64,000 nucleotides of DNA. Source: Octopus sinensis. Taxonomy: Eukaryota. Positions 36,529-62,252 of this stretch are shown here, in pieces. The first letter of the stretch is position 1, and each line of letters begins with the position of its first letter. The notes under the pieces were generated by a model that saw only the letters and a list, made by a program, of their open reading frames with translations, made no database searches and had not been told where the DNA came from. The translations under genes were made by a program, and so were the position numbers. The stretch lies in the NCBI RefSeq assembly GCF_006345805.1, contig NC_043000.1, positions 26,040,001 to 26,104,000 on the forward strand. The letters run 5' to 3'.

Positions 36529-36571
36529 ATGGAATTGCAGTGTACACGACTGAAGTCAGTTGTTATTCAAA
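36529..36571 (+). CDS. Putative first coding exon of the TAP-C-domain gene (MELQCTRLKSVVIQ+A)
   Basis: ATG at 36529, gtaagt donor at 36572; phase 1 matches the acceptor at 41093. Confidence 0.45.
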
Positions 36572-36849
36572 GTAAGTGTTTTAATTTATAGTAATAGTGT
36601 TATTTATTCAAGCACTTCATTTATTTATACCTACTGTTTGTAATCCATCCATCCATCCATCCATCCAAAATCCATCTCCTCCAGTATTCCTGGGATGATC
36701 GCATGGGTAGAGTATTCAGGATCCTATCAGAAGCAAGCGTCATTGCACTTGCGACTGGATTCCCAAGTGCGACCAATTGAGTCTGTGGATACTATCCAAC
36801 CATCTTGTTCTTGGGCTACCCTCTAGGTCTCCTGTGACATAATAATAAT

Positions 36850-37250
36850 AATATAATGAAATTATTGTATACAATGCTCAGGTGCACCACAACTTGTCAA
36901 AAGTGCGAATAAAGTATATGCAGTGATGTACAAATGTCTGGGAAGTGAACAGTATATGAGTCAGATAGATGCTTGCGTGTGTATGGAGGGAAGAAAATCA
37001 GGTGTAGTGTTGGCGAATCTCTGGAAGCATGGAAGTTTTGAAGGATGCAGTGCTCCGACAACTAACAACTGATGCCGGCAGTTTGTTCCATGCTTCAGCA
37101 ACTCTTAGCGTCAAAAAATGTTTCCGAAAGTCATGGGAGCTGTGCTGTTTTCTGACTTTGTAAACATGTCCATGGGTGTTAGACAGGTGGAGTTTGAAAA
37201 GGTGCTCAGAGTTATTGTTTGTAAGGTGGTTAATAATTTTATGGGTTTAT
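36850..37250 (-). mobile_element. CR1-clade LINE 3' end
   Basis: FLTLRVAEAWNKLPASVVSCRSTASFKTSMLPEIRQHYT* is a typical CR1 ORF2 C-terminus (FFxxRVxxxWNxLP). Confidence 0.8.
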
Positions 37251-37755
37251 AATGACACCGTTAGTTTTGCTTCCGGTGAAAGAGTTACAGGGTGAAAGAA
37301 CCCCTACCCCCTTTAGTATTAAAAATGAACTGGTTAACGACCGAGGTTAGTTAAAAGCGAAATAAGTCGTTTTTCCTAAAATGGAGAAAGAAAAGCAGAC
37401 GGTGCTTTGGGATAGCATCACTGTGTCATGGGGAAAGGAAAACGGCACAGAACTGAAGGGGAAAATGTAAATAATAAAAATTTCGGATAAAGAATTGTAT
37501 GAAATTGTAAAAACAAAACGAAAAAAAACAAAGTCAGTTTCTTGTTTCTTTCCTTCCCTATAAAGTAGTGATAAATAGCTATTCCCAAACGCCGCTGAAA
37601 TACGTTTCCTGGTACAAAGTTTCCAATGAGACCAACTCAACAAATTTTTATGTGTCTTCTTGGTGTGACTCGAATGATTTTTTTGAACGTTTCCGTTCAG
37701 ATGTAGTTTTGCTTATCGATTACGAAACAGTCATAACTACCGTTTTTAGGAGAAA

Positions 37756-38150
37756 TCTCTCTCTATATAAAGCTTAAGTTGTCTGTGTATGGCAGGTTTG
37801 GTAGCCTTCAACTAACACTATCTCCTCCGAGACCCCGCGGCGCAAGTTGACCAGAATTGAGAGTATGATAGAAGAAGGCTTGCTCTTCCTTCCGTAGAAG
37901 ATAAAATTCAAATCGGACCATGTTGACACCAAAAATTATTTACATCAAAAAGGTGCTTTTTTTTTCTATGAAAATCCCTATTTTTTACGATTTTTTGACT
38001 GGTGTGTCGCCATTTTTCGGTGTATTTCAACCAAAAAAAATGTTCACTTAAAGAGAATAACAAGCTACACAATGCAAAATTTTTACTTTTCAAAAATTCC
38101 AATTCTAAAGGGTCGAAACAAACCCGAGCAACGCCGGGCGATACTGCTAG
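37756..38150 (+). mobile_element. Non-autonomous Helitron-like element (about 395 bp)
   Basis: A|TCTCTCTCTATATAAAGC 5' end; subterminal hairpin CCCG-agcaacgc-CGGG; 3' end CTAG|T; A/T insertion with no TSD. Confidence 0.85.
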
Positions 38151-39859
38151 TTAATAATAAAATAATTTACGAAATGCTAAAGATCGAGATTCATTTTTTT
38201 TTGGTCATTTTGCCAGTCAGATTTATCCAGTTAACAACAGCAGACGATCGTCATTGCCATGTTACCATAGCAACTGTTTAAAACCATCCCCATTGGTCGT
38301 GATTTATATAACTGGCATGTAAAAGTTTTTATACATCTGTATAGAAACTTTTAATGGGCTGCAAACAATGTTTGACCCCATCGAGGTGGGATTCAGAGGG
38401 TTTGCAAGTCAGTCCCTCTGCAGCCATTACAACATAGGGGCCTATAAAGTTTATTTAAGGGAGAATTTACTGCTTTTCCAAGCAGGTCGAGTGGCCGAAT
38501 ACAAGGCACCCTTAGTTGAATAAAGTCACTTCACACATTCTTTATATTTTCGCAGAAAATACCCAGTTTCTTATATGCAGGGAGCACAGGACCTCATTAT
38601 CCAATGTGCTCTTTTCTAAGACGGCACAGTGTCTGAAGGAAATTTAGCTGCTATTTCTTGCAGTTCAGATGACTACAGATGGAAATACGTGACCTGTACG
38701 CAATTAAAGACCTACCTGTCATTAAAGAAACCAACCGTATCGATAATTATGGTTCTGTCTGTAGTTAAAGATCTCTCGGTAAAGACCAGACTGTAAATAA
38801 GGAGGTCCTCGAGTTGGCTGTGAAAAGAGCAGAGGTTGCCTCAAAGTGGCTATAGGTCAGGAAGTGTGAGCCCTGAAGGGGACAATGCTAAGTGGACTCA
38901 AGCTGGGGCTTTCTCAACCCTGGTAGGGTCACCTGAGCAAAGATGTTTTATTGCTCTAAGACCCAAAACTTCTATTGATGCCAGGAAACATCACCGATGA
39001 TGCATTCAGGTGCAGCCCACGATGATATCGAAAAACTTCAATGAAATTGGAACGTGTGTGTCAAACAGAAAGGACCCATTTTTTAAAATCATACGACTTA
39101 ATCAGGGAAGAAGAGCAACGTCATCCCTGCTTACAGCTGCCCCCAAAAGGGTACCTGTAGGAAAGGATGACGTTATCCTCAGCCTGGTGAATTAACTAGA
39201 ATACTGGCAATAGATTGGATCCTTTTAAAGGGACGCAAGGACCGGTTGATAATGTTAAACCGAGCGACTGATAAGAACAGACACAGTCTCGCCTAGTTTC
39301 AGTCTATTAAATTTCCTTCATAAAGCATTAATCAACTCAAGGTGATGGCCGAAGGTGTTTGCTCAAAGCGCCGCTCATTGGTATTGAACCCGAAACGACA
39401 TAGCTGCAAAGTGAGCTTTTGTACCGACACGATTATTGTCAGGAAAGATAATGGAATGATAAAATTGTACTAAATATAGAGTTGCGTCCCTTTTACGTGT
39501 TTAAATCCTGCTCGTTTTAACTTTACCTTTCAACAAACCGGGATCGACAAAATATGTAACAATGTAGTACTGGGATCGGTGAGTTTAAGTACCAGTGATG
39601 TACTGAGGTTGATTTAACCCACTATACCCTTCTCTGTGGTTTTGTAAAAAAAGACAAAAACACTGTTATTACTGAGGTGTCAACGAAGAATGAGGTTTTG
39701 ATTTCATTCAAATAAATTCAACCAGTTCATCCTTGGTATCATTTTAATTAACGGGAGGTGTTTAATTACAGGTAGGCGTTTAATTACAGATAAGTGTTTA
39801 ATTATAAGCGAAGTAGATAGTTATAAAATTTCAATAAGTGATAGAGTAGTTACGTATAC

Positions 39860-41093: not shown

Positions 41094-41848
41094 ATAGTCA
41101 TACCAAATCTGAAAAGCAGAAGCCGCCTAAAAGGACCAACCGCCATCAATCCAAAAGCGATTACACTGCTTCCAAACGCCGAGATTCTAGTACTCCATCA
41201 CGTGAACAAACTCATACCTGGCACCGAAGCTTTGTTCCTCGATCTTCAGACAACCAATGTTATCCAAGAAAGAAAAATTACCAGAATTTGTCAAAGAGCA
41301 AGAATAGCCGTGGGTCGAAGCATTCGGAAGAGGAGCGACGCAGTAATTATCCCAGCACCAGCCATGATTATGAGTCTTCCAAAAGTGCAGAATCTATCCA
41401 AGACAGTCCACAGAAGCGACAAGCCTCCACGAAAAAACCATCGTTTCATGAATCCCGAAGCAGGGAAAGAGAGAACTTTACTTCATATAACACTCCCTCC
41501 TGGGAGTGGAACCATACGATCGATGGTTATCCTACTTACCAGCAGAACTTTTGTGATTACGATAAAAACTTGTGGCCCAATGAATACCCGGTGCCCAATG
41601 TGGAATTTTACCTTCCGTTGAATTACGACCAGAGCCAGAACCCTCCCATGCCACCGCAATCTACACATGAAACGACCAGCTGTTATTTCCCCAACCAAGC
41701 GCTCAGTATACCGGAAGAGCCGCATTATGCGATACGTGAACCCTCCGATGAGGTGTTCAACGAGGGATTTTACAACTATGATTTTCCTTACAGCTTTTTA
41801 AACTTTCGTGACAACAAGAGCTGGATAAACCCACCAATAGAAAATAAG
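41094..41848 (+). CDS. Large coding exon of the TAP-C-domain gene (K/R/S-rich then Y/P/N/F-rich low-complexity protein)
   Basis: Acceptor cttctctctttgattttcag; 755 nt open in one frame (SHTKSEKQKPPKR...SWINPPIENK); GT donor at 41849, phase 0; non-repetitive sequence. Confidence 0.8.
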
Positions 41849-42479
41849 GTTTGTGGTTTGAATGCTTATAATGAAAATAAAGGGACGAAATGTAATGTTT
41901 TAATGCCTGTAAATCTTTTATATATGTTTACATTCTTAAATATTCATACATGTTTCGGTGGGATTGTACATATTTAAATGTGTGTTTATCTGTGTGTGTG
42001 TTTTAGTGTTTATGTGGATGTTGGTCTGGTTGTGCGGTCGAGAATTTCGTCTCATAATTGTGTGTTTCGAGTTGGCTCATACATCTTGGGCTGGTGCATT
42101 TATCTTAGTGCTGGGTCGACAGAAGTCTTGTGAGTAAATTGGAATGAGAACCGTGTAGAAGCTCCTTGGATGGACTTTATCACACTGTGTGACGCTGATT
42201 CTACTCGAGAACTACTTTATGAGTACTTTAAGGTCTGTGGAATGCTCCTCCACTTTGCACGCTAATTTAGGGAATAGGGTGTCTAGTTGATGAAAACAAT
42301 TAGTCACTCCTATGTCGATACGACACGAGAATCCCTCATGACTCTGTACTTTGTGTTTGTTACGCTGAAGAGGAAAATGTGAAGTGTTTAAACTAATTAG
42401 AAGTGCGCAGTGTTAGACAAATTAGATTCTTCTAGACTGATGGGAAAAGGAATATAGCTAGTATATATTCTAAATTGTA

Positions 42480-43300
42480 TGTTAATACTAAGAATGGGAA
42501 TGCGTAAAAGGGGCTTCCAAAGTGTTGTAATTTTGCAGAAGAATCAGAGGAATAATTTAATCCATGACCAGGAGAACGGAAATATAGTGGAGGTTTTCGC
42601 GATGAGAGGTACAAGGACCTCGTGTAGGCTGAGTCAGCGTTGGTATAAACTCAGCTTATTCTGCAGGAGCAAAAGGACGGCTCCAGTCGTGTAAAACGAG
42701 AGAAGAGATCAACGTTCCTTATATACGGTCTATAACGTATGTGAGTGTAGTGTGTACACCGTCTTAGCTGAATTGGTAGTCAGTACTCAGGATTTAGATA
42801 TATGGGTAGTAATAGTGAACCCTTAGATATATGAGTAGTCACTATTCAAGCTTTAGATGTATACATGGTTAATACAGAAGTCCGAAATATGCGGGGGGTC
42901 AATAATGTTGCCTTGGTGGGCAGAAACTGAAGTCCAAGACTTACTAGCATTCTGAATAGGATTGGTAACAACTCAAATCAAGAATATGTTCTGGTCCAGA
43001 AAGGGAGACCAATCTGTTATTAGTCATTGGCATTATGTAAAGAATATGTCGTATCATTAAAATGTTAGAGGCTTTGAAAGACTGGTTATGGTTCTGGTTA
43101 TGTATTCTTCACGAACAAATAGGAAGGGAAATTGATAGTTATTCTTAGGATGTCTTTTGCTATCTTGCGTTCTTATAACTTTTGACTGGAAACTAATTTG
43201 GTGACGAGAACAATGGAGCTTCTTGCTGGTCACTTGATGTAGTAGAAATAGCAACCAAATCTCACACTTGTAAATATTACACCCTACCACTTAAAAAAAG
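42480..43300 (-). mobile_element. Highly degenerate LINE-like (possibly L1/Tx1) remnant
   Basis: Coding-like composition with many stops. The segment TRTIT...YDI...FLDQ weakly resembles the RT motif GRxIxDN...RDI...LDQEKAFD. Confidence 0.35.
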
Positions 43301-44210
43301 ACTTCTGCATAAAGGGGAAAGGTGAATATGGTCTTGGATGGTTTGCTTTCGGCCATAGGTTTGCTAACAATAAGGACAACGAAAATAACACCCCCGCAAC
43401 TACCAACCACCACCACCACCACCACCACCACCACCACCACCACCACCACCACCACCACTACTACCACCACCACCACCAACTTGGAGATTTTGTTGTGGAA
43501 TACGTTACGGTCTAACCGGAGATGGTAAGGTCGTGTAGGCAAGACCTACGTGCGGAGAATGAGGAAGTACTGTAAAATGAAGTCCTCTTCGGAGAGGGCA
43601 CATAGTGAAAGCGAATATAGCTGTCTGTTAATCGATTGATTGACAAGAATGATAGATCCTTGGTGTCGTTCTTCAATGTTGTCAACCGAAGGAAATAATT
43701 GACAGAAAGTACTTCGTATATATGGGAGATCATAGTTTTTGTGTCGCTGGTTGAAGTGAAACAACTGGTTACAAGATAATCATCGGGTCGCTGCAGTTCT
43801 GACTGTGAGACTGACAAGGGAGTATCCGTAATTCGGTGCAGAGGATTTCACTTTGAAGAGCACCAGTTTTTGACGTTGTATTACGACGGAAGAGATACAT
43901 ACATGCCTAGATGATATAATATAATATAATATAATATAATATAATATAATATAATATAATATAATATAATATATGCCCCAGCATGGCCACAGCTCATAAG
44001 CTGAAACTAGAATCAATCAATCAATCATAACATAATACATGAATATATGTATACATGGTTTAATAGACACAGGAGTTATACGTGAGCTACTTGAAGTTTC
44101 ATGGTCGGGTAACTCAGTTATCGGACGGGCTTGTGTAGCGTACAGTGCCGTACCGGCGCGTTTTACAAGCCCGTCCGAAATCTCCACTTTCCGAACACGA
44201 AATTCTTGTA

Positions 44211-44585
44211 CAATTGCAGCATGGAAGATGTTTACAAGCCATTTAAAAGCACAAAAACCGTTAGATTCACTTTAACATTTAAATTTAATTTGCCAAAATA
44301 TTTTCGTCGCTTGGGGACCGTGACCTGTTCACTGACAAAATTCTGTGATAGCCAGAACCATAACAAATCTTTCAAAACCTCTAACATTTTAATGATACGG
44401 CATATTCTTTACATTACGCCAAAGACTAATAACAGATTGGTCTCCTTTTCTGGACCAGAACATATTTCGCCAGTGAACAGGTTGTGGTCTCAAAGCGACG
44501 AAAATATTTTGGCAAATTAAATTTAAATGTTGAAGTGAATCTGACGGTTTTTGTGTGTTTTTAAATGGCTTCCACGTTGCAATTG
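44211..44585. mobile_element. Foldback element (about 125-bp arms) whose spacer is homologous to 42984-43100
   Basis: Arms caattgc...aagccatttaaaagcacaaaaaccgttagattcac...gacctgttcactg / cagtgaacagg...gtgaatctgacggtttttgtg..ttaaatggcttccacgttgcaattg. Confidence 0.85.
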
Positions 44586-44716
44586 TTTTCGTCCCAGCAC
44601 ACGATCTCAGATCAGGTCACTTTCTATGCAAGGACATCTCCGAAATTTCTTGTAACTAACGAATAACTCCTATATTCATGAAGCTATGCATATATACGCG
44701 CGCGTGCACACACACA

Positions 44717-44759
<43 letters not shown>

Positions 44760-44773
44760 TCCATCCACACACG

Positions 44774-44804
<31 letters not shown>

Positions 44805-45304
44805 CACACACACACACACACAACCATTATAAGAGTGTATATGTCCATCTTGATCTTTTGCTATGTAGTTATGTAGCTATCGTCTGTTATTTCTCAGTTT
44901 TCTTTACAATGCTGAATATCAATGTTTTAACATTCTATCTTTCTGCTCATCGAAAAGCTTTGCCATTTCAAAAATTTTCTCTTCGTTTCTCTTTCACTCT
45001 CTGTCTTTATCACTATATCACTATCTCTTCATTTCTCTCTCTCTCAATTGCTATCTATCCTTCTTTATTTCCGTCTTTCTCTCTCTCTCTCTCTACTTCT
45101 CTCACTCCCTTGCTGTCTGTTTCTGTTTGGCAAGGTTTACAGTTTTAGAAAAAGACTTGGTTCATGTAGACCTGCAGCTGGTTATACTGTATGCGAGTCA
45201 TATTATGTAATTTTAAGGAATTTATGCGGCGAGCAAATTTTGTGGCTACGGGACTAATTTTATAGTATTTTATGCTGAAAGTTGCTTGAAATAACGTTTC
45301 TATC

Positions 45305-47244: not shown

Positions 47245-47428
47245 TGTAGTAAAGATTGTTTGCCAACATAACATGACAGTCCTGGTTTAGGACGAATGTT
47301 CGAAAAACGTAAGGACACAGATCGTGTCGTATAGCCAGCTGGAGACGATGTTTCCTGGGGCTAAATTACAGCAACATTAGTCCTAAACCAGGAGTGCCAT
47401 GTTATGTTGGCAAACAATCTTTACTACA
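47245..47428. mobile_element. 184-bp MITE with about 56-bp TIRs (TGT...ACA)
   Basis: tgtagtaaagattgtttgccaacataacatgacagtcctggtttaggacgaatgtt / aacattagtcctaaaccaggagtgccatgttatgttggcaaacaatctttactaca. Confidence 0.85.
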
Positions 47429-48569: not shown

Positions 48570-48632
<63 letters not shown>

Positions 48633-50617: not shown

Positions 50618-50657
<40 letters not shown>

Positions 50658-51759: not shown

Positions 51760-54700
51760 ATTACTTTTTTTTTCTTCTTTCAAATTTGCTTCCATTTCTT
51801 GCCGAGTGTCTTCCCGACTCCTAGGGCAAAGAAATTCATAGTATGCATTGGTAGGCCATTAAACCAAACTCAGTAGTTCGTTCATCTTTTTAAATTTTTT
51901 TTTTAAAGTTAAATTAAAATACATGAGCAGCAACAGTTCTCACATCGACAATGCTCTTCTCAATACGTGTGATGTACCAGTTAAGACAATCTTTTGCACT
52001 TCTTGCAGGGATGGTAAGCCAGGGATCATTCTCATATAATTTTCGGTTCCCTTCTTGATCATTCCTAGTGCTCCTACGATCACTGGTATTGTAACCGCCT
52101 TGAGATGCCACATTTTCTCAATTTCAATGAGTAGGTCTTTATTTTTTCTGAGCTTGTCAAACTCTTTCGCTGAGATATTATGATCACAGGGGATGCTCAT
52201 GTCGATCAATAAGCAAACTTTATTGTTTTGGTCTTTCACAACAATATCTGGTTTATTGGCCTTGATGGTTCGGTCTGTATGTACTGGAAAGTCCCACAGA
52301 ATGGTTACATTTTCTCCTTCAGTTACAGCCTCAGGGTGGTGATTATACCACTTGTCGGCAGTTTTGATATTGTAATGCCGACTTATTAGCCAGTGTAGAT
52401 ATTGGCCAACTCTGTCATGTCTTAATTTATACTCCACTGGTGCTAAGACTTTACATCCAGAGATTAGGTGGTCCACTGTTTCAATCATGTCGTTGCAGAA
52501 TCGGCATTTTGGGTCTGCTCCATTTTTCATCACATTGGCCTGGTAGTTCCGGGTTAATAGGCTTTGATCTTGAGCAGCCAGGATGAAACCTTCGCTCTCT
52601 GCTTTTAGCCCTGAGCTCCGTAGCCACTGATGGGTTTGCTTCTGGTCAACATCAGCTTGTTTGCTGCGGGTCACATATTTGCCGTGCAGAGGTTTCTCCT
52701 CCCACCTATCAGCCAATTGCTCGTGCGCTTTCTTCATTGCCATCATTTTCACCTTCTTTGCAACAACAGTTGCCGTACTTCCCTCGGGTTGTTCAGTTTG
52801 GGTATCCTGCACGAGATCAATAGCAAATTTTTTGCTTTCCTTTATAATAGAATGAAGCTTCTTTCGTCTCTCGTGATTTTCCACGAGCTTTAGCATCCAG
52901 TCATTCGATATTTCGAGATATTTGGCCAGTCCAATTGTGGTTGTTTTGTAAGCTAGTTCAAATTGGATCAGGCCTCGACCTCCTTGGGCTCTGGGAAGGT
53001 AAAGGCGATCTACGTCTGCCTTTGGGTGGTGCATCCTATTACAACTCAGCAGCTTGCGTATTTTTCTATCTATATTCTTTACTTCACTCATATTCCAGTT
53101 CAACACATTGTAGCTATAAGTAACAACTGGAACTACTAAGGAATTTATAGCTAACACCTTGTTACGTGCATTTAGTTCAGATTTCAGGACTGCACGAACT
53201 CTCCTATAACATTCCTTCCTGATTTTCTCTTTCATGCTTGCATGCTGAATACCAGAGCCTTCATTTATCCCTAAATATTTGTATGATTGTTCTTGCTCAA
53301 GCTCTCTTATGACTGTGTCAACATCTAACACGACTGAATTTGTGGTCTTCACTTTCCCTTTCTGGAAAGTGGCCTTGGCACACTTCTCAAGTCCAAACTC
53401 CATCCCGATGTCATCGCTGAATGCTTTCACGGTGCGCAATAGGCCTTCAAGTTCATTATTGTCTTTACCATAAAGTTTTAAGTCATCCATATAAAATAGA
53501 TGGCTTATTTTTTTATTGGCAATTTTATACCCATACCCTGTTCTGTTTAATTCACTTGTAAGGGGTATTAGGGCTATGCAGAATATTAAAGGTGAAAGTG
53601 AGTCACCTTGAAAAATTCCACAGTTGATGTTTATATTTTCTGAGGCAAGTACTCCATTAGAGTGGTATAATTGGAGATTCGTATTCCACAACGACATATT
53701 GTGCTTCAGGAAGTTTGAAATCACAGGGGAAATTTTAAAGATGTCCAGCGATCTCAAGATCCATGGATGCGGTATACTGTCGAAGGCCTTTTTATAGTCA
53801 ATCCATGCCGTGCCGAGATTTCTGCGCTTGTTGTGACAGTTCTCAAGGATCATACGATTGATTAGCAGTTGATCTTTGCATCCGTAAGAGCCTCGGCGGC
53901 ACCCTTTTTGTTCAATGGGGAAAATATCGTTCTTCTCCATGAATGCATATGTTTTCTCCGCCAGGATAGATGTTAGGATTTTATGCGTGGTGGATAGACA
54001 GGTTATAGGCCGATAGTTTTTTGGAAGGTTGGTTTCGTTATTCTTTGGGAGTAGGTAAGTAATGCCACTTGCTAACCATTCAGGTGTTTTCTTTGGGTCT
54101 CTCATAATTCCATTGAGCAGCTGAACTAGCTTACCGTGTGCGCATGGGAGCGATGCGAGCCAGAAATTCGGCACCCTATCTTTACCGGGGATTTCCAATT
54201 ATGGGCCTTCGTGAGTGCCTTTCTTAGGTCTGCTATTGTGATGTCTTCCCATGCTTGTTGTAAATTTTGGTAGGATCCTTCAGTTTGTATAATCCAGTCT
54301 GCATTTATGTTGTACGTCTTCTTGTCACTCCAAATCCTTTTCCAAAAGTTTTGAACTTCTTCCATGGGAGGGGGGTCTTTAACGGTTACTTTCTCCTTCC
54401 CTATTTCTCTGTAGAATTTTTTGGCATTGGATGTGAACAGCTTATTTTGCTTGTAAAACTTGTTTCTCTTCTCAAATCTTCGTATTCTTTGGGCTTTTGC
54501 TTGGACTTTTTGTTTCAGCGTTTCTTTTATTGATATCAGTTCTTCTCTTGGTGAGGATTCAAATTTTCTCTTCATCTTTCTTCCTGTTCTGGATCTTACA
54601 TCATTTCCACATATTAGTTCATTTAATATTGATATTTCCCCTCTCATAAATTCAATCTCTTTTTCAATTTTACTTCTCCAGGTTTGATTTCTTCCCAGAT

Positions 54701-54900
54701 TTTGTTTTCTTTGTTTTTTCGGGGGCATACAGCTGGTTTCAATTGCCCTAGCAGAAGCGTAAATAATTTCATTTAACTCAGTAAAATCAGGTTTTAATTC
54801 TCGTATTATTTCATTTGTTACATAGTTGCCAATTTGGATTTGTTTTTTATTTTGGTTTGTATTTGAGAGTTTATGAAGTGGTTCTCTATCATTCATACTT

Positions 54901-54902
<2 letters not shown>
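51760..54902 (-). mobile_element. R4/Dong-clade non-LTR retrotransposon, 5'-truncated, inserted in (AAT)n
   Basis: (AAT)n on both flanks (51737-51757 and 54903-54952); RT, CCHC knuckle and restriction-like endonuclease in one ORF; short 3'UTR. Confidence 0.95.
51940..54198 (-). CDS. Reverse transcriptase + zinc knuckle + restriction-like endonuclease (R4/Dong ORF, C-terminal about 750 aa)
   Basis: NYRPITCL, WIDYKKAFDS, GIFQGDSLSP, HLFYMDDLKLY, YKYLG, CRFC...DHLISGC, RHD, KPDIVV...LIDMSIP. It joins the upstream ORF (54200-54900) through a single-base frameshift at tcccc|ggt. Confidence 0.95.
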   Translation of the reverse strand: MEIPGKDRVPNFWLASLPCAHGKLVQLLNGIMRDPKKTPEWLASGITYLLPKNNETNLPKNYRPITCLSTTHKILTSILAEKTYAFMEKNDIFPIEQKGCRRGSYGCKDQLLINRMILENCHNKRRNLGTAWIDYKKAFDSIPHPWILRSLDIFKISPVISNFLKHNMSLWNTNLQLYHSNGVLASENININCGIFQGDSLSPLIFCIALIPLTSELNRTGYGYKIANKKISHLFYMDDLKLYGKDNNELEGLLRTVKAFSDDIGMEFGLEKCAKATFQKGKVKTTNSVVLDVDTVIRELEQEQSYKYLGINEGSGIQHASMKEKIRKECYRRVRAVLKSELNARNKVLAINSLVVPVVTYSYNVLNWNMSEVKNIDRKIRKLLSCNRMHHPKADVDRLYLPRAQGGRGLIQFELAYKTTTIGLAKYLEISNDWMLKLVENHERRKKLHSIIKESKKFAIDLVQDTQTEQPEGSTATVVAKKVKMMAMKKAHEQLADRWEEKPLHGKYVTRSKQADVDQKQTHQWLRSSGLKAESEGFILAAQDQSLLTRNYQANVMKNGADPKCRFCNDMIETVDHLISGCKVLAPVEYKLRHDRVGQYLHWLISRHYNIKTADKWYNHHPEAVTEGENVTILWDFPVHTDRTIKANKPDIVVKDQNNKVCLLIDMSIPCDHNISAKEFDKLRKNKDLLIEIEKMWHLKAVTIPVIVGALGMIKKGTENYMRMIPGLPSLQEVQKIVLTGTSHVLRRALSM

Positions 54903-54952
<50 letters not shown>

Positions 54953-54957
<5 letters not shown>

Positions 54958-55027
54958 TCACTGCCTGGAATCGAACTCGGAATCTTGGGATTAGTAGCCT
55001 GTGCTCTTAACCATTGCGCCATATGGC
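54953..55027 (-). mobile_element. tRNA-derived SINE head (same family as 14612)
   Basis: gccatatggcgcaatggttaagagcacaggctactaatcccaagattccgagttcgattccaggcagtgacctg: A and B boxes, followed by (AAT)n. Confidence 0.8.
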
Positions 55028-56394
55028 TGTTGTTGATTAAACGCAGGAGTCTGCAACATTGAGGTCGCGATCCATAACTGAGACACTGAAATCTGCTGGG
55101 TGCCTTAAACCTTTTCTAACACCTTTTTTCCCAAAATTAATCTCTTTGCGGATTATAGAACGTTGATGGCTTTGTGTGATGAATTCATTCATCGTTTATC
55201 TTTTTACTTGTTCTAGTCATTAGACTGCGACCATACTGAGGTACCGCCTTGAGGAATTTTAGCCGAACGATTCGACCCAAGTACTTATGTTTTTAAAGCC
55301 TGGTACTTATTCAATCGGACAGTTTCGCCGAAACGCTAAGTTGGTGTGCAGCCTCATGCACCAAGACGTACACACATAGCGGCCATCTCCTTCCAGTTTC
55401 TGTCTGTCAAATCCATTCACAAGAATTTGTAAATATTTAGGCAGTGAAGCGGATATATTATATAAGTTAAGAAGTAAAAAAAAAGATGTTTTATGGCTGT
55501 GAAAAGATAGAAGAAAGAACATGCACGAGCTTTTCGAGGCCTCCGTGAGTGTAAGGAAGAAAGGAAAACCTTAGACCACGCCCGAGACCTTTGCTGAAGA
55601 CGAACAAAGGACCAAACAGTGGTGTTAAACCGAGCAAACATTCTGTGAATGATCGATCTGCAGAGTTACCACAGTTTTCTTCGACCGGTTTACACTCGCA
55701 AGGTTTTGGCAGTTCGGGGTTACAACTAAAATACATGTGCCACAGCAGCGTCGCAGTGAGATTAAACGAGAAACAACGGAGATGTGAAGGAAACTTCTTG
55801 ACCGCACAGCCACGCCTATGACTCTGTTGACCCCACACAGCAATCCCAACCAACAAGGCCTGCACGTTTATCGACAGTCTTAAATACACTCACTTGAATG
55901 CAGAACCATACCTGCATCTTTTTTGACCACACAGCTACGTGTGTACCAGTGCTGACCACAGCTTTGCTTGTATTTTTCTTGACCACACAGCTATGCCAAC
56001 ATCTATGTCTAAGCAGTTATAAAGGAATAACGGTAGACTGTCATTTTTGCCTCTGTTTTACCTAGGGGCACATTTTGGCGAACCTTAACCAGATTTTCAA
56101 GGCGCTTAAGTGATGGAGGTACCACACTCACTCCTGAGCGAGATATCTGTCCGTCATAGAACTAACCTCCTAGTACCGCTGGCACTCATTTACAGTTAGC
56201 TTGACTGAGAATTGAACGCATATCCTAAACATCGTCAACGTAACATCTAAGCTGTAGATCCTGCATTTTCGTGGTGGAAACTAGAATCAGAAATGTTATT
56301 GAAGTAAACACAAGACTAAAAAATAAACAAAAGCAAAAAAAAAACAACAAAAAAACAAACAAACAAAAAACAAAAAAAAAACAGGTGTACTCTT

Positions 56395-56945
56395 TTCTAC
56401 ACTTGGCACAAGGCTTGAAATTTTTAGGGAGGGGGCCAGTCGATTAAGTACGCCACTGGTACTTAATTTATCGACCACGAAAGGATGAGAGGCAAAGTCG
56501 ACCTCGGCGGAATTTGAACTCAGAACGTAGCGGCAGACGAAATACCTATTTCTTTACTACCCAGAAGAGGCTAAACACAGAGTGGACAAACAAGGATAGA
56601 CAAACGGATTAAGTCGATTGCATCGACCCCAGTGCGTAACTGGTACTTAATTTATCGACCACGAAAGGATGAGAGGCAAAGTCGACCTCGGCGGAATTTG
56701 AACTCAGAACGTAGCGGCAGACGAAATACCTATTTCTTTACTACCCAGAAGAGGTCAAACACAGAGTGGACAAACAAGGATAGACAAACGGATGAAGTCG
56801 ATTACATCGACCCCAGTGCGTAACTGGTACTTAATTTATCGACCCTGAAAGGATGAAAGGCAAAGTCGACCTCGACGGAATTTGAACTCAGAACTGACGA
56901 AATGCCGCAAAGCATTTTGTCCGGCGTGCTAACGATTCTGCTAGA
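56395..56945 (-). mobile_element. Tandem multimer of SINE family A (units about 180 bp, nearly identical)
   Basis: cactggtacttaatttatcgaccacgaaaggatgagaggcaaagtcgacc... occurs three times, sharing private variants (ccacg, gagagg, ccagaagagg). Confidence 0.9.
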
Positions 56946-57646
56946 TCACAATTGGTATCACGTACTTGTTTTATACCCTTATAAATTAAGTGTCAGTTTA
57001 AACGGACGATCGGCATGAATGGGTTAAAATATATATATACATAAGTAGTCGATCGATTTGTTCGACTAAACCTTTCAAGGTGATGCTCCAGGTTGGCCGT
57101 CGCTCAGTGAGAGAAACACGTAAAAGCTGAATACCAGGACAAAGTATATCTCACACAAAATATACATGCAGTATGCACCGCAACGCTGTCCTTATTAAAA
57201 CTTACGCACTTAAACAAAAAAAAATATATTCAAAAAGTTAGTGCAAGGTTTCACATAGAACGGAAGGTAGAAAATAATCGATACTTTTGTTGTTTCACGC
57301 TTAAATCTGTTAATACCTCTTCGAAGATATTCAGGGATTTTGCTCAATTCAAACATTAGAGAAGTTTACAGTTCGATTTAGTGAGCTTGAACTTTGAAGA
57401 TTTTAGAAATACAGATTTCAATGCGAGATAATGGAGGAAAAAATTTTTTTTCTATCGTCTGTAGATTTTGAAACCGTGCACTAACCTTTTGAAGATCTGA
57501 CTTTTAAGTGGGGAATTTTAATGGTATTCTTTTATTCTTTTATGCGTTTCAGTCCAAAGGCTGTGGCCATGGTAAGGCACCGCCAATGTTATTACCTTTT
57601 CAATGACAGCTCTTTTGTGGTTGGTGTTTTTGAAGGAGGGAGTTCG

Positions 57647-57721
<75 letters not shown>

Positions 57722-59229
57722 TTTTATTTGTTTTTGTCATTTGAATGTGGTCATGCTGGAGCACCGCCTTTAGTCAAACAAATCGTCCCCAGGACTTATT
57801 CTATCGCTCTCTTTTGCCGAACCGCTAAGTTACGGTGACGTAGGTTTATCTGGGACCTTGGACAGCAAGAGGTCAAGTTGTTTCTTGAAACCGTCTGCTC
57901 CTACTCCATGTAGATCTCTCATGTTTTGGAAAGGTATTAAATAGCCGATATTGTTCCAAATGCACACACACACACATGCGTGCACATTTCTCTCCTCTCT
58001 TTTCCATCTCCCTTTTTCTCTTAATATAAATGTATATGTAACAGGAATATTTGCAGAGTCCGAAACACCAACTCACAATTCGGAATCACTGTCTTCAGAT
58101 GTGAAAATAACAATAGACAAACAGGATTCTGTTAAGAATTGATGACATCAGCAAACAACTAATTATTCCAGTTTCTGGTAAACATTATATTAGGAATTTG
58201 TTTTTCATCAGTTGCTGGACTGACTGGCAGATAAAATCCTCAATAGAACCAACATATGTTTAACTCATTAGATTTCAGTTGTGTTAAGCCACGGATCTTT
58301 ACCTTTTGACCTACAGATTTAAAAAATAATTTTTGTAACTAAACACTTTCAAATTTCGGACACTGCTAGAAGGTCTCATACAAAACATCTTTTACTCTTA
58401 GCATTTTTGAGAAAAACTTACATTTACGAAGTAATTTCACGTTAAAGCAGTCCTATTTCGGTAATTTCAACCAATCAATGACGTGTATTTGGCTGAATAA
58501 AATTACTGCCGTTGTTTATCAACAAGAACTTCCGGCGGTGTATTTTTCGTTTGTCACTGTTATTTATTTATGCAATAAGTTGTATTGGACTACGCGTTAC
58601 CATTAGCCCTCGCGAGCGGCTTGTCCTTTTTCTGAAAGAATGAACGTGGCGGCTGGTATTTCCGACGGACATTGCTGGTCATCATTAAAAAATGAACTTT
58701 GAACTTCAATGAAAAACAAAATGATAATGGACAAGTCTGTGACAATCTTCCAGAATATTCTTTGTCTGTTTTATGCACGCTTCAAGTCAGGAATTGTGAT
58801 TCTCTTTATGATGTTCCAGGTTTTGAAAAATAAATGAAAATTAAAGAAATTGGATATCTTTGAATCGAATTACTGAGAGACGAGATTGAGAATCTTTTTC
58901 GAGATTTCACATCAAAGAAATCTCTATTTCTACTGGTTTTCAACTCTTGGTTTGTACATGAAAAAAAAATGGCGACATGCTTTTTCTTTTAGAAGATATT
59001 ATTTTTATGTGTGCATTGTATGTATTATTTTTATGCGTAGTTATATAATATAAAAAGTCAAGTAGATTATATATACATTTATTTTAATTTTACAAAGAAA
59101 CGGTTGCCTGTGACCTTGAAGTATTCGGCTGAATTGCCTTCGTTAGACAATCCGAAAAAGGCAGCTGCGTCGAAACTTCGAAGACATTACCAACTTTTCG
59201 TTGTAACAAAAATACGTATAAGAAAGCAT

Positions 59230-59333
<104 letters not shown>

Positions 59334-59367
59334 ATATATATATATATTATATATATATATATATATA

Positions 59368-59414
59368 AAGTAGTACCTCGGTTTTCGAAAAACTCAGATC
59401 GCGAATAAATCGTG

Positions 59415-59453
<39 letters not shown>

Positions 59454-59581
59454 CATGATTTATTCGTGATCAGAGGCGTTCGTAAACCGAGGTACTACTG
59501 TATTAAATGAATATGAGAACGACAGGAGATGAAGTACGATTTATTTGTGATCAGAGTTGTTCGAAAACCGAGGTACTACTG
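59368..59581. mobile_element. pogo/Tigger-like MITE with central (TA)n and duplicated right arm
   Basis: AGTAGTACCTCGGTTTTCGAA left end; two right ends CCGAGGTACTACTG|TA at 59500 and 59581. A mariner-like TIR (tattgggttggtgcataattattgcgg) follows at 59586. Confidence 0.75.
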
Positions 59582-59951
59582 TATATATTGGGTTGGTGCA
59601 TAATTATTGCGGCTTTTTTTTCAACAAATTTTATTCAACAAAAACAATAACATGTAACAAAGTAAACGCGAACGAAATGCCGCTAACCATTTTTCTCGGA
59701 ATGCTAACGGTTTTGTCAGCTCGCCTTATATATATATATCACATTCGTTTTAACGAAAATTTATGGAAACAATTTAGCATTAAACTGAAAGATTACTGAC
59801 TATTTTAAAGTGGAGTACATGTTTACTAAACTTCAACAAGCAAACGGTTGATAGTGACTTCGAAGTTTCAGCTTGCTCGAAAATATTGCCTGAATATAAA
59901 TGTTCTTGTATTTTATGTACAGAAATTACACATCCATTCATACATAACAAC

Positions 59952-60024
<73 letters not shown>

Positions 60025-60031
60025 GGACACA

Positions 60032-60063
<32 letters not shown>

Positions 60064-60100
60064 AGCCAGACGCATACAATATAACCATATCTTATTTCAG

Positions 60101-60405
60101 GTGATACCGTGTACAGGTTACTCTAACTTTCCGGTCAACAGCTTTTTCAATCCGCCAGGAGGATTTCTGCAAGACAGCACTTCAGGCATGAACTTTCACT
60201 CTGATTCTGTCCATTACATGTTTCCACAAGTCCCACAGTTCTGTGACAGCTACATTCCAGTCAGACAACACATTATACCATCGATTCCAAAAAGCACAAA
60301 GAAAGCCCCCAAAGACAATTCGAATGAATTCGACGAGGCTTTGAAACGGATTATGATGGAGCAATTCTCCTTGTTTACAAACTTCACCCCACAATTTAGC
60401 ACATG
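60101..60405 (+). CDS. Coding exon of the TAP-C-domain gene (P/F/S-rich linker and first half of TAP-C)
   Basis: Acceptor cttatttcag, phase 0; VIPCTGYSNF...EALKRIMMEQFSLFTNFTPQFST; donor gtaagt, phase 2. Confidence 0.85.
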
Positions 60406-60944
60406 GTAAGTTTATTGAGCTTTCTTTTTGTCTGTCTTCAAGAGAGCTGGAATTCTTTATTGCTGAAGAACTTTTACTAAATAATATACCAGTTCTATTA
60501 CATTCAAGATCCTGTAAATAAAACAAGGACCATTATTTTGCCTGCACTCTTTTTGCCAGTCTTCGAGAGAGTTCTTCATTGCTTTTCTGATACAGTAAAT
60601 CATTGAAGTTGGACAGCTTTTGACGAATAATTTCATGGATCGCTTAAATTAATCAATTAATCATAACACAGACCATTTTGTCTTTCTTCTTTTATTAATT
60701 ATACTTCATTCACTTTTTTACTGTAAAATCTGGAGAAATTTTGCGAAATAATTCCATTGATCTCTTAAATTTAGCAGACCCTTATTCTGCTCGAACTTTC
60801 TTTGGTGACATTCTTGGAATTGCTGTAATTTTTCATAGTTTTGCTATAGAAGCTTCCTCATCTGCCCTGTTTTCATCAAATAACCGACACTTTAACAATT
60901 TTGCCTATCTGCCTTCCCGGTACTGTCAGCTCGCCGCCTTAGAC

Positions 60945-61150
60945 GAAAAAGGGAAGGCAAAAACCATCTGGGACTTTGATTTCCAGACAGACAAGGTGTT
61001 AGAGTCAAACGTAAAGATTGTCCCTATTATCATCGGGGCATTGGGTTCAATAGAGCCCAACCTGAAGAAACATCTGGAAACTTTAGAAATGTCCTACAAT
61101 CTAGGTGTACTGCAAAAATCGGTATTGCTTGGAAATAAAGTACTTTCTGT
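60945..61150 (+). mobile_element. Internally deleted R4/Dong-like 3' fragment
   Basis: KTIWDFDFQTDKVLES|NVKIVPIIIGALG...LQKSVLLG..KVLSV*; the PD..D core is missing. Confidence 0.75.
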
Positions 61151-62191
61151 CTGAGGTCCTTATTGTCACTTGACTGACAGTACAATATCTTCAATCAACA
61201 ACATCACGACGTCTTAAATAATAGAAATATTCCTGAAGCTGAGCCAATTGGCTGGAGGCCTGGGGTTAGACTAAGAACAAGATGGTTTGAAAATATCCAT
61301 AATCTCAGTTGATCATAGTTAAGAATCCAGCCTAAAAGTCTAATGATGGTTGCTTCTGATAGGACCCTGCGGAGGAGGTGCCTGAGGACTCTACCCCTAC
61401 GACCCACCCAAGTATAATGGGTGGGAAAAATGGATGGAAGGAAGCCGGATGTAGAATGTTATAAATTGTAGGCGTTTACACAGAATCGATTGTGACAATT
61501 AGAAAAGATAGATAAAAAAAATCTACTCTTAAAAAACAACAAAAGACAAAAGTAATGAAATGAAACGCCTCAATAAGGGATAATCTCAAGGGCCAATCAA
61601 AGAGTCCATCAGCTCCGTTCTTGGGGCTTCTTGGCCGACAGATTTCTCTGGTGTGTAGTTATATTTTACGAGTTGACGCATTTTTCAAAGAGGCCATACT
61701 CTCTGCTGCCACTCATTTAAATAATTTACTTCTGGAGAGGTTGGGATCGCCTGTCCCTCCATATTCAAATAGAATTTGAAGAAGTTGAAAGTTTGGCCCG
61801 AGAGGAAAATGTCTGTCTCCTATCTCAGCCTTGCCTATCATCATACTAACTCTTTTGCCATAACGACCAGAGGAAAACTGTGTTTCTCTCGGCTAAAGGA
61901 AGGTGGTGCTGCTGTCCTCACAATGGTCTCGGCTGACAGCCATATCTGCCCTATACACAATATGACAGCTAACATTAACACACGAAGTGAATGTTGATAT
62001 GTTCTAAGTCCTAGACCTCAGTTTTGCATCGAGGAATTAGAAATTTTCATCAGAGACGCATCATTTAAAACAAAAGAGCGTAAGCAATGTGATATTTTCT
62101 TATAATTTTTACAAACCTAGGAAACTCTGGGTACCGCCGCTAGTAATGGTAATAGAAATAAAAATAGGTTGTTTGTATTGTTCTGTTTCAG

Positions 62192-62252
62192 GTGTTTGGA
62201 ATGCTGTGGTTGGGACTATGGAAAAGCAGCTGACAGTTTCATCTACAATAGT
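62192..62252 (+). CDS. 61-nt coding exon, second half of the TAP-C (UBA-like) domain
   Basis: Acceptor ttgttctgtttcag, phase 2; (W)CLECCGWDYGKAADSFIYNS; donor gtgagt, phase 0. Aligns without gaps to NXF1 [20 protein letters not shown]. Confidence 0.85.

What the first reader, a model, noticed from the sequence alone, without database searches (positions are those of the whole stretch)
36529..62252. Gene for a TAP-C/UBA-domain protein that appears to lack the rest of the NXF1 export-factor architecture
Seen: four exons splice in compatible phases (1, 0, 2, 0) into about 390 aa. The C-terminal KRIMMEQFSLFTNFTPQFSTWCLECCGWDYGKAADSF aligns without gaps to the NXF1 TAP-C segment [37 protein letters not shown] (F..., CL, WDY, A, F conserved). 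Upstream is only K/R/S-rich and then aromatic/Pro-rich low-complexity sequence. Known: NXF1/Mex67 proteins are RRM-LRR-NTF2-like-TAP-C; TAP-C binds FG nucleoporins, and divergent NXF paralogues such as Drosophila Nxf2 and Nxf3 were co-opted into piRNA pathways. From memory, to be verified: vertebrate NXF1 also has a 61-nt penultimate exon split at the same codon. Inference: this may be a lineage-specific NXF-derived adaptor in which a disordered, possibly condensate-forming region replaced the RNA- and NXT1-binding modules.
Basis: partly seen in the sequence, partly recalled or inferred. Interest (0 to 1): 0.8.

Follow-up and report, generated by a model that had tools for sequence, protein, structure and literature searches.

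The report
Octopus orphan TAP-C domain gene
This is a real, strongly conserved octopus gene that keeps only the small pore-binding end domain (TAP-C) of the mRNA export factor NXF1, joined to about 335 residues of otherwise unknown sequence; it is already annotated but nobody has studied it.

Summary
The window is Octopus sinensis chromosome CM016862.1. Spliced, they give the first 388 aa of RefSeq XP_036357829.1 (LOC118762906, 401 aa). The fifth exon lies about 12.4 kb downstream of exon 4, outside the window.

- **Domain:** the C-terminus is a genuine TAP-C domain. Pfam scores 31.5 bits against a cut-off of 21.3. hhalign against NXF1 TAP-C gives 93% probability. The best structural match is human NXF1 UBA (1OAI).
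- **Origin:** the 61-nt exon and both flanking intron phases are identical in alpaca NXF1. The domain was therefore inherited from an NXF gene at the DNA level.
- **Architecture:** no RRM, LRR or NTF2-like exon was found in Octopus or in the compact 5.6-kb Argonauta orthologue.
- **Selection:** the whole protein is under purifying selection (dN/dS about 0.11-0.13). It is compositionally biased but not low-complexity.
- **Family:** a search of 1.84 billion proteins found only a roughly 1,300-aa octopod paralogue and one unidentified contig.
- **Prior knowledge:** UniProt already auto-names the O. bimaculoides orthologue "TAP-C domain-containing protein". No paper was found.

Function is inferred only. 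The most likely role is a nuclear docking adaptor that uses TAP-C to bind FG/Phe motifs or a partner helix.

The parts
36464..36528 (+). Sequence just upstream of the ATG (5'UTR or proximal promoter), conserved between Octopus and Argonauta. In-frame stops lie 11-12 codons upstream of the ATG.
   Evidence: The blastn match between the Argonauta and O. sinensis loci (72.6% over 124 nt) starts 65 nt upstream of the O. sinensis ATG (72 nt in Argonauta) and runs into exon 1. In-frame upstream stops are present in all three species.
36529..36571 (+). Coding exon 1 (43 nt, MELQCTRLKSVVIQ + 1 nt); the intron after it is phase 1.
   Evidence: The N-terminus is conserved in Argonauta.
41094..41848 (+). 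Coding exon 2 (755 nt, aa 15-266). It encodes the Ser/Arg/Lys-rich basic region (aa 1-145, net charge +16) and the first part of the aromatic/Pro/Asn-rich region.
   Evidence: It is 74.5% identical in nucleotides to Argonauta.
41849..60100 (+). Intron 2 (18.3 kb), inflated by transposons; the Argonauta equivalent is 1.6 kb. No conserved or NXF-like exon lies inside it.
60101..60405 (+). Coding exon 3 (305 nt, aa 267-368). It encodes the rest of the aromatic/Pro-rich region and TAP-C helices 1-2. It ends in a phase-2 intron inside the Trp codon just before Cys-Leu.
60326..60405 (+). First part of the TAP-C domain coding sequence (EFDEALKRIMMEQFSLFTNFTPQFSTW).
   Evidence: Pfam TAP_C matches aa 351-384. 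The predicted helix 1 begins around aa 340. This is the stretch shared with the paralogue and with L002.
60406..62191 (+). Intron 3, phase 2, at the same position as the intron before the penultimate coding exon of vertebrate NXF1.
   Evidence: alpaca NXF1. The same intron is present in gene B and in L002.
62192..62252 (+). Coding exon 4 (61 nt: G + 20 codons, CLECCGWDYGKAADSFIYNS). It encodes the end of TAP-C helix 2, the WDY loop and helix 3. It has the same length and the same phases as the NXF1 exon.
62253..64000 (+). Start of intron 4 (12.35 kb in all). The last coding exon (helix 4, IPYMAY, plus the stop) lies at window-equivalent 74606-74647, outside the window.

Best explanation
Shown: this is a real, conserved, five-exon protein-coding gene found only in cephalopods (LOC118762906). 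Its last three exons carry a TAP-C/UBA-like domain inherited, with its introns, from an NXF (NXF1/Mex67-type) gene. The preceding ~335 residues have no detectable relative outside octopods, and no RRM, LRR or NTF2-like module is present.

Inferred mechanism: the protein is a nuclear docking adaptor.
- The basic Ser/Arg/Lys-rich N-terminus (net +16, several KR/KK clusters) supplies nuclear import and possibly RNA or RNP contact.
- The C-terminal TAP-C tethers the protein to short hydrophobic peptide ligands. The default ligand is the Phe of nucleoporin-type FG or Phe motifs, bound in the pocket next to the conserved W-D-Y loop.
- An isolated TAP-C binds FG repeats only with tens-of-micromolar affinity, and NXF1 needs two FG sites to engage the pore. 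This protein therefore cannot be an export receptor on its own. It would work by transient docking, by avidity or partner binding, or by competing with NXF1.
- The conserved aromatic/Pro-rich middle region is most likely an array of specific linear binding motifs.

I am about 90% confident in the identity and origin. The confidence figure given applies to the mechanism.
For: Gene is real:
- The sequence is identical to the RefSeq model.
- The same five-exon structure occurs in O. sinensis, O. bimaculoides and Argonauta hians.
- dN/dS is 0.11-0.13. Exons are 97% identical between the two Octopus species, against 87% for introns.

TAP-C domain:
- Pfam scores 31.5 bits against a cut-off of 21.3, in both orthologues and in the paralogue.
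- hhalign gives 93.4% probability across all four helices.
- The family profile's top four PDB hits are all human NXF1.
- The AlphaFold domain model has pLDDT 80, with three helices plus a short fourth.
- The top Foldseek hit is 1OAI, with TM 0.82 (normalised to the 59-residue target; 0.64 to the query) and rmsd 1.2 A.

NXF origin: the 61-nt exon with phase-2 and phase-0 flanking introns is the same as in alpaca NXF1.

No other NXF parts.

Pocket plausibly open:
- W-D-Y, equivalent to human W594-D595-Y596, is invariant in the family.
- At the two positions whose salt bridge (E814-K829) closes the pocket in Drosophila Nxf2, the octopod proteins have C/W/S and N. This comes from mapping the alignment onto the text of Batki et al..

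Weak single-site affinity and the two-site requirement.

Basic N-terminus composition.
Against: - No expression, localisation or binding data exist, and no paper mentions the gene.
- A single FG site is known to be insufficient for pore engagement by NXF1.
- At the two positions that distinguish Panoramix-binding Nxf2 (V800, I827) from non-binding Nxf1 (Q, E/T), the octopod family has hydrophobic F and I. That favours the rival helix-clamp mode.
- The paralogue lacks helix 4 in Octopus, so whatever the family shares does not need the complete domain.
- The structural model was built from an alignment that was three-quarters NXF1 sequences. It is therefore biased towards that fold.
Confidence: 0.4

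Rival explanations
1. Helix-clamp module, as in Drosophila Nxf2-Panoramix. In this reading the TAP-C no longer serves pore binding. Its hydrophobic helix 1/3/4 face grips an amphipathic helix of a lineage-specific partner, or of the protein's own conserved middle region, to assemble a nuclear complex such as a co-transcriptional silencing or RNA-processing complex.
For: - The octopod family has F and I at the positions equivalent to Nxf2 V800 and I827. These are hydrophobic Panoramix contacts in Nxf2 and hydrophilic in Nxf1 proteins that do not bind Panoramix.
- Almost every TAP-C surface position is invariant: 47 residues are identical between Octopus and Argonauta, and omega is 0.02-0.04. 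That is more than a shallow FG pocket would need.
- Helix 1 has a family-specific conserved N-terminal extension, EF[DE]xA[LF][KR]R.
- dmNxf2 UBA is among the top structural matches.
Against: - The inference rests on two alignment positions and one precedent.
- Helix 4, part of the Panoramix-binding face, is missing from the Octopus paralogue.
- No partner is known.
- The FG-pocket loop W-D-Y remains invariant, which would not be expected if pocket function had been abandoned.
Confidence: 0.3
2. Ubiquitin-binding UBA. The domain works like a classical UBA, or like the reported ubiquitin/Hpr1 binding of yeast Mex67 UBA. It would read ubiquitylated nuclear proteins.
For: - TAP-C belongs to the UBA-like fold.
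- Lower-ranked Foldseek matches include ubiquitin-bound UBA domains such as TDP2, Ede1 and Dsk2.
- My own background knowledge is that Mex67 UBA binds ubiquitin and Hpr1.
Against: - No Pfam UBA, UBA-like or CUE family hit appears even at E up to 10; only TAP_C matches.
- All the best sequence and structure matches are NXF or Mex67 TAP-C domains.
Confidence: 0.1
3. Competitor or regulator of NXF1. The lone TAP-C, possibly together with the Phe-rich middle region acting as a pseudo-FG ligand for the NXF1 pockets, would occupy FG sites or NXF1 itself and so modulate bulk or selective mRNA export.
For: - The features are the same as for the main explanation.
- The middle region contains conserved Phe motifs (NSFFNPPGGF, YDFPYSF). 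These resemble the non-nucleoporin Phe motifs of Sac3N that bind Mex67.
Against: This is entirely speculative. Only two GF dipeptides and no FG repeats are present, and no stoichiometry or expression data exist.
Confidence: 0.1
4. The gene is an annotation artefact or a decaying partial duplicate of an NXF gene, with no function of its own.
For: No transcript evidence could be inspected with the tools available. No transcriptome-derived copies of the protein were found in the collection.
Against: - The intact ORF and identical exon structure are kept across Octopus and Argonauta at dS about 1.2, with omega 0.13.
- The Met start is conserved, with upstream in-frame stops.
- Only the five exons are conserved across the locus.
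- Independent annotations agree.
Confidence: 0.03

Closest known systems
NXF1/TAP (Mex67) C-terminal TAP-C / UBA-like domain (Pfam PF03943; PDB 1OAI, 1GO5)
   Same: - The sequence profile match is above the curated cut-off.
- The fold is the same: three helices plus a short fourth.
- The W-D-Y loop and the terminal IPxxA[FY] helix are conserved.
- The domain sits at the extreme C-terminus.
- The exon structure is identical: a 61-nt exon with phase-2 and phase-0 flanking introns and a 12-13-codon last exon.
   Different: - Identity is only about 26%.
- Helix 1 carries a conserved N-terminal extension.
- The residues at human Q577 and T604 are hydrophobic here (F, I).
- The host protein has none of the RRM, LRR or NTF2-like modules, so it cannot pair with NXT1/p15 and lacks the second FG site.
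Drosophila Nxf2 UBA domain in the SFiNX/Pandas complex with Panoramix (PDB 6OPF, 6IEW)
   Same: - It is an NXF-derived TAP-C put to a use other than bulk export.
- It has hydrophobic residues at the two Panoramix-contact positions that separate Nxf2 from Nxf1.
- It is a good structural match.
   Different: - Nxf2 keeps the full NXF architecture, with duplicated RRM-LRR, NTF2-like domain and Nxt1 binding.
- Its FG pocket is closed by an E814-K829 salt bridge. The octopod proteins have C/W/S and N at those positions.
- Nothing links the octopus gene to piRNA biology.
Octopod paralogue 'gene B' (O. sinensis LOC118767288, O. bimaculoides LOC106884196, Argonauta Ahia01_000734800; about 1,300 aa)
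   Same: - The TAP-C is 60% identical over 47 residues.
- It has the same phase-2 intron.
- It has no other Pfam domain.
- It lacks the NXF architecture and is restricted to cephalopods.
   Different: - Its upstream 1,289 residues are unrelated to gene A and are encoded by one giant exon.
- The donor after the TAP-C exon is shifted (59 nt, phase 1).
- The Octopus protein stops right after helix 3, so helix 4 is missing.

Membership tests
NXF / Mex67 nuclear RNA export factor family | N-terminal RNA-binding RRM-type domain (Pfam Tap-RNA_bind PF09162) | tested here: not met
   - There is no Pfam hit in the protein.
- There is no hit in any + frame of the Argonauta gene body.
- A vertebrate NXF1 HMM and tblastn against six-frame translations of the window and loci found nothing better than E about 0.4-0.75, apart from the short TAP-C exon itself.
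NXF / Mex67 nuclear RNA export factor family | Leucine-rich repeat domain (PF24048) | tested here: not met
Full-length profile-profile comparison aligns only the TAP-C.
NXF / Mex67 nuclear RNA export factor family | NTF2-like domain that pairs with NXT1/p15 (Mtr2) and carries the second FG pocket (PF22602/PF02136) | tested here: not met
   Only the five annotated exons are conserved between the Octopus and Argonauta loci.
NXF / Mex67 nuclear RNA export factor family | C-terminal TAP-C/UBA-like domain | tested here: met
   Pfam scores 31.5 and 29.0 bits against a cut-off of 21.3. hhalign gives 93.4% probability. The top PDB and Foldseek hits are NXF1.
NXF / Mex67 nuclear RNA export factor family | Shared gene structure across the TAP-C coding region | tested here: met
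   The 61-nt exon, the phase-2 intron in the codon before Cys-Leu, the phase-0 intron 20 codons later and the short last exon are all identical in alpaca NXF1 and the octopus gene. This was not compared with octopus NXF1, which could not be fetched.
TAP-C domain (PF03943, UBA-like clan) | Three-helix bundle with a short fourth C-terminal helix | tested here: met
   In the AlphaFold model (pLDDT 80; numbering of the 77-residue construct) DSSP marks helices at 16-35, 39-48 and 53-66 and a three-residue helical turn at 72-74. Against 1OAI the TM-score is 0.82 and the rmsd 1.2 A. Caveat: 12 of the 16 alignment rows were NXF1 sequences.
TAP-C domain (PF03943, UBA-like clan) | Conserved N-W-D loop between helices 2 and 3 (human N593-W594-D595), needed for nucleoporin binding | tested here: met
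   W, D and Y are invariant in gene A, gene B and L002. The preceding residue varies (G, D or Q). That this loop is needed for nucleoporin binding is my own background knowledge, not something tested here.
TAP-C domain (PF03943, UBA-like clan) | Binding of nucleoporin FG repeats | not testable with these tools
   This needs a binding assay. Sequence analysis shows only that the Nxf2-type salt bridge which closes the pocket is absent.
Classical ubiquitin-binding UBA/CUE domains | Match to UBA/CUE profiles | tested here: not met
   No UBA, UBA-like or CUE family is reported even at E up to 10. Such structures appear only among the weaker Foldseek hits.
   None of the 401 residues falls in a window of 12 with entropy at or below 2.2 bits. 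Omega is 0.07-0.22 and identity to Argonauta is 63-73% at dS about 1.2. The compositional bias is real: S/R/K-rich first, then 18% aromatic and 14% Pro.

The most novel reading that the evidence does not exclude
Coleoid cephalopods captured the last exons of an NXF gene and built a small family of 'orphan TAP-C' proteins: the 401-aa gene here, a ~1,300-aa paralogue, and a homologue in an unidentified more distant genome. These proteins would form a new class of pore-docking or helix-clamping adaptors. They would act independently of NXT1, for example in lineage-specific control of RNA export or retention, or in transposon silencing. That would be the first case of TAP-C working outside the NXF architecture.
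Probability: 0.2. Interest if true: 0.7.

Novelty: new variant of a known kind. Interest (0 to 1): 0.5.

Why it matters
TAP-C is known almost only as the last module of NXF export receptors. There it works together with the NTF2-like/NXT1 unit. The co-opted paralogues studied so far (Drosophila Nxf2 and Nxf3) keep that architecture.

A strongly conserved protein that retains only TAP-C would show that the domain can work as a portable docking module. This one has two paralogues that share nothing else. It would give a natural minimal system for asking what a single FG or helix site can do. It would also be a clean example of exon-level domain capture, dated by shared introns.

The practical value is limited until expression and binding partners are known.

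Tried and rejected
- **Hidden NXF exons.** I ran tblastn with four real vertebrate NXF1 proteins and an HMM built from 99 of them against six-frame translations of the window, the whole O. sinensis gene with flanks, and the O. bimaculoides and Argonauta loci. I also ran Pfam on all three + frames of the Argonauta gene body and compared the Octopus and Argonauta loci by blastn. Only the TAP-C exon and the five known exons appeared. The NXF probes were vertebrate, which weakens that part of the negative result.
- **O. vulgaris alternative N-terminus.** That model (CAI9721912) uses an exon at window 13648-13701. In O. sinensis the frame of its extended exon 2 runs into a stop just before 41094. 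Argonauta conserves the MEL/MEEE start instead. I treat the model as a prediction artefact.
- **O. bimaculoides isoform X2.** It reads through the exon 4 donor. That reading frame is not conserved in O. sinensis.
- **Full-length AlphaFold.** With a 2-sequence alignment the model had pLDDT 33. It says nothing either way about disorder.
- **Identifying the organism of contig L002.** There is no shared intron or transposon DNA with Octopus. A search with its LINE ORF returned only unnamed ENA proteins.
- **Fetching octopus NXF1.** The word-indexed search lists only the best 120 hits, and all were vertebrate.
- **Literature.** The locus names gave nothing. One search on 'TAP_C' was swamped by unrelated 'TAPC' chemistry papers.
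- **Paralogue's N-terminal 1,000 residues.** A sequence search of the paralogue against PDB matched only human NXF1 TAP-C chains, at its C-terminus, so the N-terminal 1,000 residues found nothing.
- **The (CA)n tract upstream of exon 3 as a splicing element.** It is long only in O. sinensis, short in O. bimaculoides and absent in Argonauta.

Full report
**Observation**

All have GT donors and AG acceptors. Their lengths are 43, 755, 305 and 61 nt, so the phases are 1, 0, 2, 0. The spliced 388 aa are 100% identical to the first 388 residues of a 401-aa database protein, XP_036357829.1, 'uncharacterized protein LOC118762906 [Octopus sinensis]'.

The window is part of O. sinensis chromosome CM016862.1. 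The missing last exon encodes HIVKRIPYMAYNA plus the stop. It lies 12,353 nt downstream of exon 4, at window-equivalent 74606-74647, outside the window.

**Is the gene real?**

Orthologues exist in O. bimaculoides (LOC106881497), O. vulgaris and the argonaut Argonauta hians, which is 70% identical. I mapped the coding exons in three genomes. All have the same five exons: 43 or 46, 755 or 761, 305, 61 and 39 nt. Intron sizes differ greatly:

| Species | Intron 1 | Intron 2 | Intron 3 | Intron 4 |
|---|---|---|---|---|
| O. sinensis | 4.5 kb | 18.3 kb | 1.8 kb | 12.4 kb |
| O. bimaculoides | 3.5 kb | 12.7 kb | 2.3 kb | 2.3 kb |
| Argonauta hians | 1.45 kb | 1.62 kb | 0.35 kb | 1.0 kb |

dN/dS is 0.11 against O. 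bimaculoides (dS 0.105) and 0.13 against Argonauta (dS about 1.2). By region it is 0.07-0.10 for residues 1-145, 0.16-0.22 for 146-335 and 0.02-0.04 for the TAP-C. Between the two Octopus species the exons are about 97% identical and the introns about 87%.

In-frame stop codons lie 9-12 codons upstream of the conserved ATG in all three species. No RNA data could be inspected. The junctions therefore rest on canonical splice signals, frame, conservation and agreement between independent annotations.

**The C-terminal domain**

- Pfam TAP_C (PF03943) matches at 31.5 bits in Octopus and 29.0 bits in Argonauta, against a curated cut-off of 21.3. Nothing else matches.
- Pairwise similarity to human NXF1 is weak (17.7 bits, E 0.037 against PDB).
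- A five-sequence family profile puts four human NXF1 TAP-C chains on top (E 2.9e-5).
- hhalign against 12 vertebrate NXF1 TAP-C domains gives 93.4% probability and E 2.5e-7 over 53 columns. This includes the terminal IPxxA[F/Y] helix encoded by the exon outside the window.
- An AlphaFold model of the last 77 residues has pLDDT 80, with three helices and a short fourth.
- Its best PDB match is 1OAI, the human NXF1 UBA domain bound to an FxFG peptide, with TM 0.82 and rmsd 1.2 A. Next come 1GO5, Chaetomium Mex67 UBA and Drosophila Nxf2 UBA.
- Caveat: 12 of the 16 alignment rows used for that model were NXF1 sequences.

**Origin**

I fetched a real vertebrate NXF1 gene (alpaca, L003) and mapped its last exons.

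- Its penultimate coding exon is 61 nt: one base completing a split codon, then 20 codons (CLQDN...THLK).
- The preceding intron is phase 2, in the codon immediately before the Cys of 'CL'. The following intron is phase 0. The last exon has 12 codons.
- Octopus exon 4 is also 61 nt: G plus 20 codons (CLECC...IYNS). It has the same two phases at the same aligned positions, and its last exon has 13 codons.

It is the strongest evidence that these exons were inherited from an NXF gene at the DNA level. They did not arise by convergence or from a retrocopy. I could not compare with octopus NXF1 itself, because the protein search lists only its 120 best hits and all were vertebrate.

**Absence of the rest of NXF**

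- tblastn with four vertebrate NXF1 proteins found nothing better than E about 0.75 in the window or the full O. sinensis locus, and E 0.2-0.4 in L002.
- A profile HMM built from 99 vertebrate NXF1 proteins found nothing better than E about 3 in the window or the full O. sinensis locus.
- In the O. bimaculoides and Argonauta loci only the 61-nt TAP-C exon registered.
- Pfam on all three + frames of the entire 5.6-kb Argonauta gene body found only TAP_C.
- Full-length profile-profile comparison with NXF1 aligns only residues 347-399 to NXF1 565-616.
- In a blastn comparison of the Argonauta and O. sinensis loci, the only collinear non-repeat matches are the five exons and about 65 nt upstream of the ATG. 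No conserved hidden exon exists.

**The upstream 335 residues**

- Residues 1-145 are Ser/Arg/Lys-rich (S 21%, R 11%, K 11%; net charge +16) with several KR/KK clusters.
- Residues 146-335 are 18% aromatic, 14% Pro and 10% Asn, with net charge -11.
- This is compositional bias, not low complexity. No residue falls in a SEG-like low-entropy window.
- The sequence is 63-73% identical to Argonauta although synonymous sites are saturated.
- Long invariant strings such as FYNYDFPYSFL, WINPPIENKVI and SYIPVRQHIIP look like specific motifs or a fold that could not be predicted.
- The full-length AlphaFold run with two sequences gave pLDDT 33 and is uninformative.

**Family**

An exhaustive HMMER search of 1.84 billion representative proteins with the Octopus-Argonauta profile returned only four hits at E <= 0.001:

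1. The gene itself.
2. and 3. Two representatives (Argonauta and Octopus) of a ~1,300-aa octopod paralogue, 'gene B' (LOC118767288, LOC106884196, Argonauta Ahia01_000734800).
4. An 87-aa ORF on an unnamed 387-kb ENA contig (L002).

Gene B shares only the TAP-C with gene A (60% identity over 47 residues) and has no other Pfam domain. It is built from one 3.9-kb exon, then the same phase-2 intron, then a 59-nt exon. It stops right after helix 3.

L002 has the same phase-2 intron and an exon-4 equivalent 10 kb downstream. Its TAP-C is closer to gene A than to gene B. It shares no intron or transposon DNA with Octopus, so it comes from a more distant, unidentified organism.

No canonical NXF protein reached significance in that very large search.

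UniProt already auto-names the O. bimaculoides proteins 'TAP-C domain-containing protein'. No paper mentions any of the locus names.

**Mechanism (inferred)**

Published work shows two binding faces on this domain.

- **FG pocket.** This is used by NXF1. An isolated domain binds with a Kd of tens of micromolar. Mutation of either the UBA pocket or the NTF2-like pocket abolishes pore binding.
- **Helix face.** The opposite helix 1/3/4 face is used by Drosophila Nxf2 to clamp the Panoramix helix. The pocket of Nxf2 is closed by an E814-K829 salt bridge.

I used the PDB alignment of human NXF1 with dmNxf2 and the family alignment to map four diagnostic positions:

| Role in Nxf2 | dmNxf2 | Human NXF1 | Octopod family |
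|---|---|---|---|
| Panoramix contact | V800 | Q | F |
| Panoramix contact | I827 | T | I |
| Salt bridge | E814 | D | C / W / S |
| Salt bridge | K829 | L | N |

The W-D-Y loop (human 594-596) is invariant in the family.

The pocket is therefore not closed in the Nxf2 way, and the opposite face is Nxf2-like in being hydrophobic. Both modes remain possible.

My preferred reading is a nuclear docking adaptor. TAP-C would bind FG or Phe motifs weakly, and the basic N-terminus would supply import or RNA contact. Mechanism confidence is about 0.4. The Nxf2-like helix clamp is a close rival at about 0.3. A lone TAP-C cannot by itself be an export receptor.

**Comparison, novelty and verdict**

- The protein is not a member of the NXF family in the architectural sense, because three of the four defining modules were tested and are absent.
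- Its C-terminal domain is a bona fide, NXF-derived TAP-C.
- It is a new variant of a known kind: an orphan TAP-C in a cephalopod-restricted two-paralogue family. It is annotated automatically but uncharacterised.
- Interest is moderate. The evolutionary case is clean, and the architecture is unusual for people who work on mRNA export or NXF co-option. Function is entirely open.

Noticed in passing
window 51940-54198 (-), with a further ORF at 54126-55022 (-): A non-LTR retrotransposon ORF of 752 aa with a reverse transcriptase domain (RVT_1, E 5.7e-29) and a zinc-binding RT tail sits inside intron 2, antisense to the gene. The adjacent 298-aa ORF has no Pfam match. It helps explain why intron 2 is 18 kb here and 1.6 kb in Argonauta.
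   Followed up: partly
window 49427-49888 (+): A 153-aa fragment of a Tc1/mariner-type DDE transposase (DDE_3, E 1.9e-14) lies in intron 2.
   Followed up: partly
window 27240-27965 (-) and 32946-33314 (+): Two further fragments of the same kind of LINE ORF2 tail lie upstream of the gene. One matches zf-RVT; the other shares the motif '...YYLPMR.DVVARTLYNEIRR...'.
   Followed up: partly
window 13648-13701 (+): The O. vulgaris gene model (CAI9721912, 416 aa) starts with an 18-aa exon that maps here at 100% identity, 23 kb upstream of the RefSeq start. In O. sinensis its continuation into an extended exon 2 hits a stop codon. It is probably a prediction artefact but could be an alternative 5' exon.
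   Followed up: partly
window 59957-60064: A (CA)n microsatellite of about 110 nt ends about 35 nt before the exon 3 acceptor. It is only (CA)9 in O. bimaculoides and absent in Argonauta, so it is a species-specific expansion and not a conserved element.
   Followed up: yes
window 62253-62285: O. bimaculoides isoform X2 (XP_014787388, 399 aa) reads through the exon 4 donor and ends without helix 4. In O. sinensis the same read-through frame stays open for about 100 codons into ATGT-repeat sequence, so it is not conserved.
   Followed up: partly
L004 2001-10662 (O. sinensis CM016878.1): This is paralogue 'gene B'. A single 3,867-nt exon encodes 1,289 residues of Leu/Ile/Phe/Lys/Asn/Cys-rich sequence with no recognisable domain. 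A TAP-C follows, split by the same phase-2 intron, and the protein lacks helix 4. What the large N-terminal part is remains unknown.
   Followed up: partly
It is preceded by aromatic/Pro-rich sequence (FQLFPFQDPYAFPINKP). The genome carries thousands of copies of one LINE family.
   Followed up: partly
proteins P0068, P0070, P0075 (bat and hedgehog NXF1 isoforms): Some predicted mammalian NXF1 isoforms skip the exon before the 61-nt exon and join ...SG directly to CLQDN. That removes TAP-C helices 1-2.
   Followed up: no
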